64,000 nucleotides of DNA from Macrostomum lignano. Lineage: Eukaryota. How positions within the stretch are numbered: position 1 is the first letter of the stretch; every line of letters starts with the position of its first letter. The notes below the pieces were generated by a model, which did not search any database, was not told where the DNA came from, and worked only from the letters and a program-made list of their open reading frames with translations. This document shows, piece after piece, positions 51,097 to 63,563 of the stretch. Location of the stretch: positions 131,106 through 195,105 of the forward strand of contig NIVC01002184.1 of the NCBI GenBank assembly GCA_002269645.1. The letters run 5' to 3'. The position numbers and the translations under genes were made by a program.

Positions 51097-54000
51097 TCAG
51101 TGAGTCAGAGTTGCCAGGATCACCGTCCGTATCAGCCGAGTCTCCTTACTTCTTTTGCGGGGCAGAGCCTGCAATGGGGATAAAGCGGGCCAGATTGCAA
51201 GTGAAAACGAATTTGAATTCGCACTCAGTGACAACAACCAGCACCCGCCTACCGATCAGAGTCTGCTGGGTTGTCTCGCTGACCACAATGTTTGACATGC
51301 CTTGCAGGTCTGTGGAAAATTGGAAGAGAAACATGGCGTCAAGGTTAACCAAATTACCCCAATGCGAATAACACTTCACTCATTTGACATCCCTGACTAT
51401 CCCACAACATCCAGACTATTGCAAACCATCCAGACTATCCCACACCATCTCAGACTATCCCAGACTATCCCTGACTATCCCACACCATTCCAGACTATCC
51501 CAGACTATCCCAGACTTATCCCACATCATCCCTCATACTATCCCACACCATCCCAGACTTATCCCACATCATCCCTCATACTATCCCACACCATCCCAGA
51601 CTTTCCCACACCATCCCAGACGATCCCAGACCATCCCAGACTATTCCACACCATCCATATTATCTCACACCATCCCAGACTATCCCAACACCATCCCTCA
51701 TACTATCCCACACCATCCCAGGCTATCCCACACCATCCCTGACTATCCCACACCATCCCAGGCTATCCCACACCAAGGTCCTGGCACTCACTCTCCAGCG
51801 AGGTGGTGTACACAGAATTGTGCCAGCCTCCGCCGCACTCCATCGAGGCGTCCCCGGCGCAGTCTTTGTCGCAGCTGGTCTGCAGGCCGGGCCCGTACTT
51901 GCCGAACTGCTGGCCACACCAGCACTCCTTGCCGTTCTGAAGGCCGACGAACTTGAACTGCCGGTCCTGGCAGAGTTTCACGCACCGCTTGACGGTCATG
52001 GCGTCCGAGGTCTCGGCCATGGTGGGCAGGTCTCTGTCGGCAGAGTCCTTGAAGCAACCGAAAGCAAGCTGGTGGATGGCTGCAAAGTTAAATGTTAATC
52101 TAATTAAATAACTTTGTTAGCAAACTGTACAAGAGATTTATTCAACTTAACGAGGATTGAAATTGGTTGGTTGTTAGCTTCCATCACCACTAACTCACCA
52201 TCAGACCCAACTGTAGTCCAGATGTACTCGTAAGAGATTACAGTCGTGCCTCCAATAACGGTATTTGTCGTAGTAGATGTAGTTGTCCAGCTGCTGATGG
52301 TGGTGACATCGCCCAGGAAAATCTCTGTGACTTCGCCGGTGATTGACTCGGTGCTGCTGATGCCCTCGCTGATGATGATGGCATCTGGAGATGGGGCCAA
52401 TTGGCGGAGTTGAGTCTGGTTATAGGCTTTCTAAACCAGCCCTAGTAATATCTAGAACCAGCCTGACTCACATCTAGAACCCGCCTCAGTCACATCTGGA
52501 ACCAGTCTCAGTAATATCTGAAACCAGCCTCAGTCATATCTGGAACCAGCCTCAGTCACTTCTAGAACCAGCCTCAGTCATATCTGGAACCAGCCTCAGT
52601 CACTTCTAGAACCAGCCTCAGTCATATCTGGAACCCGCCTCAGTCATATCTGGAACTAGCCTCAGTCATATCTGGAACCAGCCTCAGTCATTTCTGGAAC
52701 CGGCCACAGTCATATCTGGAACCCGCCTCAGTCATATCTGGAACTAGCCTCAGTCATATCTGGAACCAGCCTCAGTCATTTCTGGAACCAGCCTCAGTCA
52801 TATCTGGAACCAGCCTCAGTCATACCTGGAACCAGCCTCAGTCACATCTGGAACCGGCCTCAGTCATATCTGGAACCCGCCTCAGTCATATCTGGAACCA
52901 GCCTCAGTCATATCTGGAACCAGCCTCAGTCATTTCTGGAACCGGCCTCAGTCATATCTGGAACCAGCCTCAGTCATACCTGGAACCAGCCTCAGTCACA
53001 TCTAGAACCAGCCTCAGTCATGTCTGGAACCCGCCTCAGTCAAATCTGGAACCAGCCTCAGTCATGTCTGGAACCAGCCTCAGTCATATCTGGAACCAGC
53101 CTCAGTCATACCTGGAACCAGCCTCAGTCACATCTGGAACCAGCCTCAGTCATACATGGAACCCGCCTCAGTCACATCTGGAACCAGCCTCAGTAATGTC
53201 TGGAACCCGCCTCAGTCACATCTGGAACCAGCCACAGTCATGTCTGGAACCCGCCTCAGTCACATCTGGAACCAGCCTCAGTCATGTCTGGAACCAGCCT
53301 GACTCACATCTAGAACCGCCTCAGTCACATCTGGAACCAGCCTCAGTCATGTCTGGAACCAGCCTGACTCACATCTAGAACCACCTCAGTCACGTCACAT
53401 CTAGAGCCAGCCTCAGTCACATCTAGCCAGCCTCAGTCACAACTAGAATCGCTTTAGATTTATTCGGATGTTGAAGCTGGTTCTTTGTAATACTGAGTCG
53501 CCGCTCACCCTTGGTCAGCCCTGTCGAGTAGACGGTCTGCATCAGACTTCCGCCGCAATGCTGGCTGCTGTCGCCGTCGCAATTCATGATGCCCGAGCTG
53601 GCGTCCTGAATTTGGCCGTGCCTGCCGTAGCTGTTGCCGCAGCGGCACTCGTTGCCGTTCTGCACACCGAAAAATAGAAATCCGTAGCGCCTGCACAGCT
53701 TCCGACAGTTGTTGAGATTTGTCTTGACCTTTCGCACCAGGAATGGCAAGTCGCGATCGGTCGTTTTGTCCAGGAAGGTGCCGAGACTGCTGAACTCATC
53801 TGCGGGTGGGTTTTTTACTTTAGGCTGTGTTTATTGTGTTTTTGAATTGAAAACGTAATGAATTGATGCTCAAGGGTTGCACAGGTATAACGGATGAGCC
53901 CCCTGACACACGGCTGTCGTCAGCTTGACAGGAACGTCCCCAAGAGCCCCGGCGTCTCCACTCAACCAGTTCACTCCAGGCAGTCCCTCGGTGCAGTAGA

Positions 54001-63000: not shown

Positions 63001-63563
63001 AGGGAGTGCTGGGTTGGCGGCACATCAAAGGAGCCAGGGAGTGCTGGGTTGGCGGCACATCAAAGAGGTCAGGCAGTGCTGGGTTGGCGGCAACATCAAA
63101 GGGGTCAGGGAGTGCTGGGTTGGCGGCACATCAAAGGGGTCAGGGAGTGCTGGGTTGGCGGCACATCAAAGGAGCCAGGGAGTGCTGGTTGGCGGCACAT
63201 CAAAGAGGTCAGGGAGTGCTGGGTTGGCGGCACATCAAAGGGGTCAGGAAGTGCAGGGTCAAGTGCCGCTTTATCAAGGCTCACGCGTGAGCCGGTCTCG
63301 TAAATCAAATTGTGCCAGACGCCGCCGCACAGCTGCAACTTGTTGGCCGCGCAAGGGTCGAGCACTCGGAGTCCGAGGCCTTGCCAGTAGCGTCCGTGGC
63401 TGTTGCCGCACCAGCACTGGGCCCCGACCTGCAGGGCTACTTGTAGCCATAGTCGGTGCACCGCTTGATGCAGCTGTTTACGTCAATTTTGCCGGCGCTG
63501 AGGAACGGCAGGTCGTGATCCGGCTTGTCCACGAACATCCAAGCGGTTTGATGGACAGGGCGG
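51097..63563 (-). CDS. Large multi-WSC-domain protein (at least 12 WSC domains), 5' end beyond window
   Basis: WSC exons (minus): W1 63563..63285, W2 61997..61714, W3 61261..60978, W4 58725..58441, W5 57691..57404, W6 57313..57026, W7 56802..56518, W8 55295..55014, W9 54850..54569, W10 54375..54088, W11 53799..53509, W12 52079..51792. Non-WSC exons 56423..56322, 56219..56178, 52384..52199, 51309..51225, 51151..51097 (TGA). Pattern GC(Y/F)xD...DLP...C...C..LGY.YAG.Q....C.CGN.YG.YG...C...C.G...CGG.....Y. W1-W3 contain indels. Confidence 0.9.
51390..51772. repeat. Intronic 10/20-bp repeat (ccagactatc/ccacaccatc)
   Basis: Lies between W12 and the first C-terminal exon. Confidence 0.9.
52432..53440. 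repeat. Intronic 22-bp minisatellite (ccagcctcagtcatatctggaa)
   Basis: Lies between W11 and the Thr-rich exon. Confidence 0.96.
57738..58392. repeat. Intronic 20-bp minisatellite (catgcacggacagaatggag)
   Basis: Lies in the W4-W5 intron. Confidence 0.96.
58733..58866. repeat. (TAG)n/(ACT)n trinucleotide microsatellite, intronic
   Basis: Abuts the W4 acceptor (actaactggcag|AA on minus). Confidence 0.97.
59408..60888. repeat. Intronic G-rich 22-23-bp minisatellite in two sub-blocks
   Basis: gtggcagatacggtgaggggagg (59408..59845), then gcagcagattcggggagagggg[g] (59845..60888). W3-W4 intron. Confidence 0.96.
61355..61652. repeat. Intronic 28-bp minisatellite (gcctttccactttagctgtccatgaagt)
   Basis: Period 28 (61381, 61409). 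W2-W3 intron. Confidence 0.96.
62035..63250. repeat. Intronic ~35-bp minisatellite (gggagtgctgggttggcggcacatcaaaggagcca)
   Basis: Period 35 (62281, 62316). W1-W2 intron. Confidence 0.95.

What the first reader, a model, noticed from the sequence alone, without database searches (positions are those of the whole stretch)
51097..63563. Poly-WSC protein built as a 4-domain super-repeat repeated three times
Seen: at least 12 WSC domains, each on a ~280-290-nt exon with phase-1 boundaries (W1's donor is off by one, probably an indel). Sequence signatures recur with period four. W1/W5(/W9): KPLGC.VDKPD.DLP, VN.C, GKA.DS.C. W2/W6(/W10): ENLGCY.DKGIHD, GK..P..C. W3/W7/W11: DLPFL..K, LNNC, YGF..FGVQN.N. 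W4/W8(/W12): DLP.L.FTGT, FG..G. Known: WSC is a Cys-rich putative carbohydrate-binding module, usually present in one or a few copies (yeast Wsc1, Kremen, polycystin-1, xylosyltransferase). Inference: a 4-exon cassette was duplicated as a block, giving a multivalent secreted glycan-binding scaffold (mucus, adhesion, eggshell or innate-immune lectin). Symmetric exons would also allow combinatorial exon skipping. This is the best candidate for an undescribed system in the window.
Basis: partly seen in the sequence, partly recalled or inferred. Interest (0 to 1): 0.78.

Follow-up and report, generated by a model that had tools for sequence, protein, structure and literature searches.

The report
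Flatworm secreted protein with 13 WSC domains
This is one already-annotated Macrostomum lignano (flatworm) gene for a secreted protein of 13 sugar-binding-type WSC modules, each on its own exon, which grew partly by copying a four-exon block; it is real but fairly ordinary.

Summary
On the minus strand, window 63563..51146 carries 12 WSC exons and 9 small linker/tail exons of a single gene. All 21 exons have AG/GT borders and all internal exons are phase 1-1. The gene is a near-identical (~99%) third genomic copy of Macrostomum lignano Mlig028452 (GenBank PAA81169.1, PAA71520.1; 'hypothetical protein / WSC domain-containing protein').

The full protein has a signal peptide and 13 WSC domains, laid out as [W0-W3]-linker-[W4-W7]-linker-[W8-W11]-linker-W12-tail. 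W0 and the signal-peptide exon lie just beyond the window end.

The four-domain block duplication is solid for blocks 1 and 2 (permutation p<5e-5; all four positional clades recovered). For block 3, only the fourth position (W11) clearly matches; W8, W9 and W10 do not fall into mod-4 clades. So 'repeated three times' is only partly supported.

Exons W1-W3 carry 8 small indels, mostly homopolymer contractions. These are probably assembly errors, less probably a decaying copy.

Poly-WSC proteins with 10-38 domains are common, and an amphioxus one shows the same 4-plus-linker period. A tandem paralogue (57% identity) shares the layout.

The likely function is a secreted multivalent glycan-binding scaffold; the tissue is unknown. 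Small WSC proteins are prominent among M. lignano prostate (seminal-fluid) candidates. Novelty is low to moderate.

The parts
63285..63563 (-). Exon W1 (WSC domain 2 of 13, class B). 279 nt here against 285 nt in the sister copy; six indel events break the frame internally.
61714..61997 (-). Exon W2 (WSC, class C). 284 nt, with one 1-nt deletion (CC->C) near 61807.
60978..61261 (-). Exon W3 (WSC, class D). 284 nt, with one 1-nt deletion (GGGG->GGG) near 61065.
59267..59284 (-). Linker-1 micro-exon L1z (18 nt, phase 1-1).
59143..59175 (-). Linker-1 micro-exon L1a (33 nt, phase 1-1).
59017..59055 (-). Linker-1 micro-exon L1b (39 nt, phase 1-1).
58897..58923 (-). Linker-1 micro-exon L1c (27 nt, phase 1-1).
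58441..58725 (-). Exon W4 (WSC, class A, first domain of block 2), 285 nt.
57404..57691 (-). Exon W5 (WSC, class B), 288 nt; carries a ninth Cys.
57026..57313 (-). Exon W6 (WSC, class C), 288 nt. The 90-nt intron before it has no stop codon, which is why W5 and W6 appear in one raw ORF.
56518..56802 (-). Exon W7 (WSC, class D), 285 nt; has CGD in place of the CGG motif.
56322..56423 (-). Linker-2 exon L2a (102 nt), acidic and Ser/Thr-rich.
56178..56219 (-). Linker-2 exon L2b (42 nt).
55014..55295 (-). Exon W8 (WSC, first domain of block 3), 282 nt.
54569..54850 (-). Exon W9 (WSC), 282 nt.
54088..54375 (-). Exon W10 (WSC), 288 nt.
53509..53799 (-). Exon W11 (WSC, class D), 291 nt; lacks Cys1 and Cys6, which form one WSC-specific disulfide.
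52199..52384 (-). Linker-3 exon L3 (186 nt), 40% Ser+Thr.
51792..52079 (-). Exon W12 (13th and last WSC domain), 288 nt.
51253..51309 (-). Tail exon T1 (57 nt).
51146..51168 (-). Last coding exon T2, ending in the TAA stop codon (51148-51146).

Best explanation
Window 63563..51146 (minus strand) is most of one protein-coding gene of the flatworm Macrostomum lignano. It is a third, about 99% identical genomic copy of the locus annotated as Mlig028452 (g1 = PAA71520.1, g3 = PAA81169.1) in this neopolyploid genome.

The product is a secreted protein of about 1440 aa with no membrane anchor. Its layout is signal peptide, then [4 WSC]-linker-[4 WSC]-linker-[4 WSC]-linker-WSC-short tail. Each WSC module (PAN/Apple-like fold, four disulfides) is encoded by one phase 1-1 exon. 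The three linkers are acidic and Ser/Thr-rich and are encoded by one to four small phase 1-1 exons.

Shown: the array grew by exon duplication, including at least one duplication of a whole four-exon block (W0-W3 <-> W4-W7). The whole 13-domain layout predates a tandem duplication of the entire gene; the neighbour Mlig032065 is 57% identical with the same layout. Inferred with weak support: block 3 (W8-W11) has the same origin but is older, and W12 may be an extra first-position domain.

Inferred from family knowledge, not tested: the mostly basic, aromatic-rich WSC modules act as low-affinity glycan-binding units whose avidity comes from multivalency, while the acidic, probably O-glycosylated linkers act as flexible spacers. 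The protein would therefore cross-link or coat glycans in an extracellular secretion. The tissue is unknown.

The indels in W1-W3 of this copy are most likely uncorrected long-read consensus errors in exons wedged between large minisatellites.
For: Identity and gene model:
- The best hit, P0001, is M. lignano BOX15_Mlig028452g3.
- K-mer mapping places all P0001 segments from aa 125 onward collinearly on the minus strand.
- The window is collinear with the P0001 locus L001 at 86-97% DNA identity.
- All 21 exons have AG/GT borders, and the ORF from L1z to the stop is intact over 1034 aa.
- The window differs from the two annotated copies at 11 and 9 of 1034 residues; those two differ from each other at 21 of 1443.
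- pN/pS against L001 is 0.21 (14 synonymous, 11 nonsynonymous changes), so the copy is under constraint.
- The Mlig_3_7 annotation is RNA-seq-guided, and that assembly holds 180 Mb of blocks at least 95% identical (PMC5730564).

Domain assignment:
- Pfam WSC gives 9 and 13 stretches.
- Kremen-1 WSC matches at E about 4e-12 and yeast Wsc1 at 5e-4 by sequence.
- An AlphaFold2 model of block 2 (pLDDT 80, pTM 0.65) superposes on Kremen-1 WSC at 1.3 A and on Wsc1 with TM 0.73-0.76.
- There are eight Cys in 24 of the 26 domains of P0001 and its paralogue P0002; in P0001, W5 has nine and W11 has six.

Secretion:
- The only hydrophobic segment is the N-terminal one.

Block duplication:
- Supported by the identity matrix, NJ bootstraps and permutation test.
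- Inter-domain gaps are [3,1,1,39,3,1,1,48,0,1,1,64].
- Orthologous positions of the two paralogues pair with 75-100% support.
- The paralogue P0091 lies about 5 kb upstream in the same orientation.

Charge pattern:
- Ten of the 13 WSC domains have pI 7.7-9.0, with 9-15 aromatic residues each. Linkers have pI 4.1-4.4 and 28-40% Ser+Thr.

Glycan binding of WSC domains elsewhere:
- SiWSC3 and ThCrd2 are cited in PMC9024836.

Indels as errors:
- Five of the 8 indels are homopolymer contractions. There are only 4 substitutions in about 850 nt of W1-W3, against 0 indels and 25 substitutions in about 3100 nt downstream.
- W1-W3 sit between the largest minisatellites.
- The assembly is PacBio/Canu polished with Pilon.
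Against: - No expression, localisation or binding data for this gene were found. Its gene ID is absent from all searched texts and supplements; for one further paper no supplementary files were held.
- WSC domains can also mediate protein-protein contacts (Kremen-1/Dkk/LRP6), and no defined sugar pocket is known (PMC9024836).
- Block 3 does not match blocks 1 and 2 in register by overall identity (p about 0.3), and W8 is not recovered as class A.
- If the eight indels are real, they would truncate the protein made from this particular copy.
- The window may come from a different assembly than L001, so the error argument is indirect.
Confidence: 0.75

Rival explanations
1. This particular copy is a young pseudogene. 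After the recent genome duplication in M. lignano, the 5' exons W1-W3 of one redundant copy acquired real frameshifts, while the other copies (g1, g3) remain functional.
For: - There are eight indel events in W1-W3, with internal stops in the expected frames.
- NCBI carries proteins for g1 and g3 but none was seen for a 'g2'.
- The genome holds many redundant blocks.
Against: - An indel-to-substitution ratio of 8:4 in W1-W3 is typical of long-read consensus error, not of decay.
- The exons of this copy are as conserved as those of intact copies, and pN/pS is 0.21 downstream.
- Five of the 8 indels are homopolymer contractions.
- The affected exons are exactly those flanked by the largest tandem arrays.
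Confidence: 0.25
2. Only one block duplication happened (W0-W3 -> W4-W7). W8-W12 are an older run of individually duplicated WSC exons, and the linker after W11 is placed there by coincidence. The gene would then not be a threefold super-repeat.
For: - W8, W10 and W12 cluster together (74%) and W9 stands alone.
- Register identity of block 3 is at background level (p about 0.3), and the natural order ranks 5th and 8th of 24 possible assignments.
Against: - W11 groups with W3+W7 at 86%.
- Class HMMs place W9->B, W10->C and W11->D in the expected order (about 5% by chance).
- A linker follows every fourth domain.
- Local signatures are shared: 'FTGT' and 'L-YRY' in W4/W8, and 'SVN-C...GKA-DS-C' in W1/W5/W9.
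Confidence: 0.4
3. The protein is a component of male reproductive secretion (prostate gland / seminal fluid), acting on glycans of sperm or of the partner's female antrum, like the many small WSC proteins of M. lignano.
For: - Prostate-limited RNA815_80.4 has two WSC domains, and its knock-down abolishes a prostate antibody stain (PMC4490696).
- Mlig-pro46 and 'several other' seminal-fluid candidates resemble WSCD2 (PMC6953679).
- At least 15 transcripts in Table S1 of the prostate screen have WSC-type best hits (PMC5977470).
Against: - Those transcripts are 0.26-1.4 kb (about 2 WSC domains), not about 4.4 kb.
- This gene's ID was not found in any searched text or supplement, so the link rests on domain family only.
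Confidence: 0.2
4. The WSC array is a protein-binding scaffold rather than a glycan-binding one, in the way the Kremen-1 WSC domain contributes to a protein complex.
For: - The closest solved structure is Kremen-1.
- WSC/PAN folds 'lack an obvious cavity' and mediate protein-protein contacts (PMC9024836).
Against: - The relatives found here pair WSC arrays with glycoside hydrolases (GH10, GH16, GH71) and glyoxal oxidases.
- Fungal WSC lectins bind beta-glucan.
Confidence: 0.2

Closest known systems
M. lignano Mlig028452 g3 / g1 (GenBank PAA81169.1, PAA71520.1; UniProt A0A267G769), 'hypothetical protein / WSC domain-containing protein'
   Same: It is the same gene. The exon order is collinear. 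Identity is about 99% over the 1034 aa that read through in the window (11 and 9 differences). It shares the 13-WSC layout, the linkers and the tail.
   Different: The window copy lacks exon 1 and W0, which lie beyond coordinate 64000. It carries 8 indels in W1-W3 and has private substitutions, so it is a third copy or a different assembly version.
Tandem paralogue Mlig032065 / Mlig000239 (PAA81170.1, PAA47080.1; UniProt A0A1I8HTR8)
   Same: It has 13 WSC domains with linkers after domains 4, 8 and 12. Every domain pairs with its positional counterpart (75-100% bootstrap). It lies about 5 kb upstream in the same orientation.
   Different: It is only 57% identical. Linker 2 is a Pro/Thr-rich mucin-like tandem repeat whose length varies between copies. 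Its W11 keeps all eight Cys, and it has a different C-terminal tail.
Serendipita indica WSC3 (fungal beta-1,3-glucan-binding lectin made of three WSC domains), as cited in PMC9024836
   Same: It is a secreted protein made only of tandem WSC domains, and it is the best functional precedent for multivalent glycan binding (details from my own knowledge of Wawra et al. 2019).
   Different: It is fungal, has three domains, and has no linker-separated blocks. Homology is at domain level only, and binding was not tested here.
Branchiostoma 'uncharacterized protein LOC144864360 isoform X45' (XP_078580859.1)
   Same: It is an animal poly-WSC protein with the same 4-WSC-plus-linker period. Gaps run 11, 16, 12, 91 aa, and lag-4 identity is 92% against 73-74% at odd lags.
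   Different: It has 38 domains in 5602 aa and its blocks are much younger. It is not an orthologue; the block growth appears independent.
Kremen-1 WSC domain (PDB 5FWS) and yeast Wsc1 CRD (PDB 7PZ2)
   Same: They share the same domain fold and cysteine framework.
   Different: In those proteins a single WSC domain sits within a transmembrane receptor or sensor. The protein here has no transmembrane segment, no kringle or CUB domain, and no cytoplasmic tail.

Membership tests
WSC domain (Pfam PF01822) | Match to the family HMM above the gathering score. | tested here: met
   Scores are 478.9 bits with 9 stretches for W4-W12 and 670.6 bits with 13 stretches for P0001; the cut-off is 27.8 bits.
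WSC domain (Pfam PF01822) | Eight conserved cysteines (four disulfides) and the CGG motif. | tested here: met
   Eight Cys are present in W4, W6-W10 and W12. W5 has nine. W11 has six, having lost exactly the Cys1-Cys6 pair. CGG is present except in W7, which has CGD. The disulfide map comes from PMC9024836.
WSC domain (Pfam PF01822) | PAN/Apple-like fold wrapped by the long L5 loop. | tested here: met
   The AF2 model (pLDDT 80.3) aligns to Kremen-1 WSC at rmsd 1.3 A over 91 columns and to Wsc1 CRD with TM 0.73-0.76. This rests on a predicted structure, not a solved one.
WSC domain (Pfam PF01822) | Carbohydrate binding. | not testable with these tools
   This needs recombinant protein and glycan or polysaccharide binding assays.
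Fungal Wsc-type cell-wall integrity sensors | One WSC domain, a Ser/Thr-rich stalk, a single transmembrane helix and a cytoplasmic tail. | tested here: not met
   There are 13 WSC domains. The only hydrophobic segment is the N-terminal signal peptide.
Kremen / WSCD1-2 type animal WSC proteins | WSC combined with kringle+CUB+TM (Kremen) or with a sulfotransferase domain (WSCD). | tested here: not met
   Pfam finds only WSC in P0001.
M. lignano prostate-limited WSC seminal-fluid candidates | Prostate-limited expression. | not testable with these tools
   No expression data for Mlig028452 were found.
M. lignano prostate-limited WSC seminal-fluid candidates | Short transcripts (about 0.26-1.4 kb, roughly two WSC domains). 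| tested here: not met
   The coding sequence here is about 4.3 kb with 13 WSC domains, against the lengths listed in Table S1 of PMC5977470.
Domain super-repeat (block duplication of several domains at once) | Domains i and i+k are more alike than neighbouring domains, for every position of the block. | tested here: inconclusive
   The criterion is met for block 1 against block 2 (p<5e-5, all four clades). For block 3 it is met only at position D; B and C are marginal and A fails.

The most novel reading that the evidence does not exclude
The 13-WSC protein and its tandem paralogue would be the large, multivalent members of a Macrostomum-specific expansion of WSC lectins used in reproductive secretions. 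They would act as cross-linkers that gel or anchor ejaculate, sperm or egg-associated glycans. The block structure and length-variable mucin-like linkers would tune valency under sexual selection, and the symmetric exons would allow isoforms with different numbers of WSC units.
Probability: 0.12. Interest if true: 0.5.

Novelty: new member of a known kind. Interest (0 to 1): 0.25.

Why it matters
It is a clean example of how extracellular repeat proteins grow: one domain per phase 1-1 exon, duplication of a four-exon block, then tandem duplication of the whole gene and polyploid copies. It adds a large member to the WSC expansion in M. lignano. Small WSC proteins already stand out there among seminal-fluid candidates, so it is a reasonable target for in situ hybridisation, RNAi and glycan-array work. 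It does not reveal a new kind of system. The domain, the multi-domain architecture and the growth mechanism are all known, and the gene is already annotated.

Tried and rejected
- Plus-strand reading: the long plus-strand ORFs over the region are translations of minisatellites, not genes.
- More WSC exons elsewhere in the window: a six-frame motif scan found none outside 51.8-63.6 kb.
- Several separate genes: rejected, because the spliced ORF is unbroken and collinear with one annotated protein.
- Expression look-ups: the gene ID Mlig028452 is absent from the full-text library and from the supplements of PMC7336406 and PMC5730564. PMC10786194 has no supplements held.
- Comparison with prostate transcripts: the sequences in PMC4490696 are truncated in the stored file, so a direct comparison with RNA815_80.4 was not possible.
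- Literature on WSC in flatworms: only two Macrostomum papers mention WSC.
- Rarity of poly-WSC proteins: rejected by the exhaustive profile search.
- Four-apple-domain disc of factor XI / prekallikrein as a structural analogue of the block: only weak Foldseek hits with rmsd 18-19 A, so not the same arrangement.
- The search for related loci was not used, because its collections (viral, metagenome, prokaryote) cannot hold flatworm orthologues.
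Full report
WHAT IS THERE

The region is eukaryotic and the gene lies on the minus strand. A six-frame motif scan finds ten intact WSC cores between 51.8 and 63.4 kb and none elsewhere in the window. 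Two more cores, W2 and W3, appear once frame shifts are allowed; W1, though matched by the scan in one frame, is also broken by frame shifts.

For W4-W12, each core sits in an exon of 282-291 nt. Each exon has an AG acceptor two bases before the first full codon and a GT donor one base after the last, which is phase 1-1. Splicing the nine exons gives an unbroken 858-aa ORF. That ORF matches Pfam WSC nine times (E=5e-147).

WHOSE GENE IT IS

The best database hit is Macrostomum lignano BOX15_Mlig028452g3. This is P0001, 1443 aa, GenBank PAA81169.1, UniProt 'WSC domain-containing protein'.

Mapping P0001 onto the window places every segment from residue 125 to the stop collinearly on the minus strand.
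- four micro-exons of 18, 33, 39 and 27 nt between W3 and W4;
- two exons of 102 and 42 nt between W7 and W8;
- one exon of 186 nt between W11 and W12;
- two tail exons of 57 and 23 nt ending in TAA at 51146.

All 21 exons have AG/GT borders, and all intact internal exons have lengths divisible by three. From the first micro-exon to the stop, the window encodes an uninterrupted 1034-aa sequence.

Residues 1-124 of P0001 are the signal peptide exon and a thirteenth WSC domain, W0. They are not in the window. In the sister locus L001 they lie 332-616 nt (W0) and about 2.4 kb (exon 1) beyond the point that aligns with coordinate 64000.

ARCHITECTURE

The protein is signal peptide-[W0 W1 W2 W3]-L1-[W4 W5 W6 W7]-L2-[W8 W9 W10 W11]-L3-W12-tail.
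- Gaps between successive WSC envelopes are 3, 1, 1, 39, 3, 1, 1, 48, 0, 1, 1 and 64 residues.
- The only hydrophobic stretch is the N-terminal one, so the protein is secreted rather than membrane-anchored.
- Ten of the 13 WSC domains are neutral to basic (pI 7.7-9.0), and all 13 are aromatic-rich (9-15 aromatic residues each).
- The linkers are acidic (pI 4.1-4.4) with 28-40% Ser+Thr.
- In the paralogue, linker 2 is a Pro/Thr-rich mucin-like repeat whose length differs between copies.

DOMAIN ASSIGNMENT

- By sequence, the nearest solved structures are the Kremen-1 WSC domain (E about 4e-12) and the yeast Wsc1 sensor domain.
- An AlphaFold2 model of block 2 (mean pLDDT 80.3, pTM 0.65) superposes on Kremen-1 WSC at 1.3 A and on Wsc1 with TM 0.73-0.76.
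- Most domains keep the eight cysteines. W5 has nine.
- W11 has six, having lost exactly Cys1 and Cys6. These form one of the two WSC-specific disulfides in Wsc1 (C27-C86; PMC9024836). The paralogue's W11 keeps both. A paired loss of this kind fits a folded, functional domain rather than decay.

THE PERIOD-FOUR CLAIM

I cut P0001 and its paralogue P0002 (57% identity, same layout) into 26 domains, aligned them and built a bootstrapped NJ tree.

Every domain pairs first with its positional counterpart in the other gene (75-100% support). The whole 13-domain layout therefore predates the gene duplication.

Between blocks 1 and 2 all four positional clades are recovered:
- W0+W4: 60%
- W1+W5: 92%
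- W2+W6: 52%
- W3+W7: 75%

Pairwise identities for W1/W5, W2/W6 and W3/W7 are 57-59% against a background of about 42%. A permutation test gives p<5e-5 in both paralogues.

For block 3, only W11 joins its class (W3+W7+W11, 86%).
- W8, W10 and W12 cluster together (74%) and W9 stands alone.
- Identity of block 3 to blocks 1/2 in register is at background level (p about 0.3).
- The natural order ranks 5th and 8th of 24 possible assignments.
- Class-specific HMMs built from blocks 1 and 2 score W9 best as B, W10 as C and W11 as D, but W8 not as A. Margins are small except for D. A leave-one-position-out control shows that only classes B and D are reliably recoverable.

Together with the linker after every fourth domain, and local signatures shared by W4/W8 and by W1/W5/W9, a threefold origin is plausible. 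What is demonstrated is one block duplication plus a conserved D position.

THE FRAME SHIFTS

Relative to L001, W1 carries six indel events (net -6 nt), and W2 and W3 carry one 1-nt deletion each.
- Five of the eight events are contractions of short homopolymers.
- W1-W3 show only 4 substitutions in about 850 nt.
- The roughly 3100 nt of downstream exons show no indel and 25 substitutions (14 synonymous, 11 nonsynonymous; pN/pS 0.21).
- W1-W3 are the exons wedged between the largest minisatellites of the locus.
- The published M. lignano assembly is PacBio/Canu polished with short reads (PMC5730564).

I therefore read the indels as consensus errors (about 0.7), with a young pseudogene copy as the alternative (about 0.25).

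The window is a distinct copy. It differs from the two annotated copies at 11 and 9 of 1034 residues, and those two differ from each other at 21 of 1443. This fits the known redundancy of this neopolyploid genome (PMC10733133 listed).

CONTEXT AND RELATIVES

In L001, a second 13-WSC gene (P0091, in the P0002 cluster) ends about 5 kb upstream of P0001 in the same orientation. The same pair recurs on another contig, shown by the adjacent accessions PAA71520 and PAA71521. Other M. lignano proteins combine 6-13 WSC domains with or without a VWA domain.

An exhaustive profile search of 1.84 billion representative proteins finds 13,731 WSC proteins at E<=0.001. Among the best 150, 19 have ten or more WSC stretches. 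Examples are Diplonema (23), a Logan contig (21), Siedleckia (19), Chromera and Tilletia (12 each), and Branchiostoma (38).

The amphioxus protein shows the same four-WSC-plus-linker period, with lag-4 identity of 92%. M. lignano paralogues show periods of 2, 4 and 6. Block duplication is therefore a general growth mode of poly-WSC genes, and 13 domains is not exceptional.

FUNCTION

Nothing here measures function. Three lines of evidence bear on it:
- Family knowledge: fungal tandem-WSC lectins bind beta-glucan, and WSC domains are appended to glycoside hydrolases and glyoxal oxidases.
- Architecture: the protein is secreted, consists of repeated WSC domains (most of them basic) separated by acidic Ser/Thr-rich spacers, and has no catalytic domain.
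- Selection: the copy is under purifying selection.

From these I commit to a secreted multivalent glycan-binding scaffold (about 0.6 for glycan binding).

The only organism-specific lead is that small WSC proteins are prominent among prostate-limited seminal-fluid candidates of M. lignano (PMC4490696, PMC6953679, PMC5977470 Table S1). Those transcripts are 0.26-1.4 kb, and this gene was not found among them. I give the seminal-fluid reading about 0.2.

VERDICT

The finding is an already-annotated gene of a known domain family with a known mode of growth: a new member of a known kind, of modest interest.

Noticed in passing
window 51388-51775, 52434-53439, 57743-58387, 58734-58888, 59409-60885, 61336-61685, 62038-63259, 63595-64000: Every long intron of the gene is long because it holds its own minisatellite. 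Units are 20, 22, 20, 3, 22/23, 28, 35 and 4 bp, with up to 66 copies. The (TAG)n run fills almost the whole 171-nt intron before W4. The arrays are also present in the sister locus L001.
   Followed up: partly
window 53509-53799 (exon W11): W11 has lost Cys1 and Cys6 together, which is exactly one WSC-specific disulfide pair. The loss is seen in all three copies of the gene, while the paralogue keeps both. This looks like a coordinated loss rather than decay.
   Followed up: partly
P0116 (Branchiostoma XP_078580859.1) and P0004/P0006 (M. lignano): The amphioxus 38-WSC protein has the same four-WSC-plus-linker (about 91 aa) period, with 92% lag-4 identity, and is named 'isoform X45', which hints at many splice forms. 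Other M. lignano poly-WSC proteins show periods of 2, 4 and 6.
   Followed up: partly
L001 1-4892 (upstream of the sister copy; would lie beyond window coordinate 64000): A second 13-WSC gene (Mlig032065g1, 1483 aa, 57% identical) lies head-to-tail about 5 kb upstream. Its linker 2 is a Pro/Thr-rich tandem repeat whose length differs among copies.
   Followed up: partly
window 44181-45539 (-): An intronless 452-aa ORF encodes a rhodopsin-family GPCR (7tm_1, E=9e-29). It is the next gene downstream of the WSC gene on the same strand.
   Followed up: no
window 34618-36502 (+): Overlapping ORFs carry reverse-transcriptase and RNase H domains. This is a retroelement fragment lying between two Kelch-repeat coding regions at 20587-21591 and 38258-38941.
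   Followed up: no
window 1325-1984 (+) and 25981-26454 (-): There is an exon-sized ORF with an ABC-transporter ATPase domain and another with a ligand-gated (glutamate-receptor-type) ion channel domain.
   Followed up: no
window 31413-32786 (+): A 457-aa ORF begins with about 17 copies of an 18-aa unit (NLNASEQEPASNGVTTES...). It has no Pfam hit. It may be the N-terminal part of the BTB/Kelch-like gene that follows, or a translated minisatellite.
   Followed up: no
window 8806-10376, 12427-13473, 24947-25666: Long microsatellite arrays translate as (YLSI)n and generate spurious ORFs of 240-480 aa on both strands.
   Followed up: no
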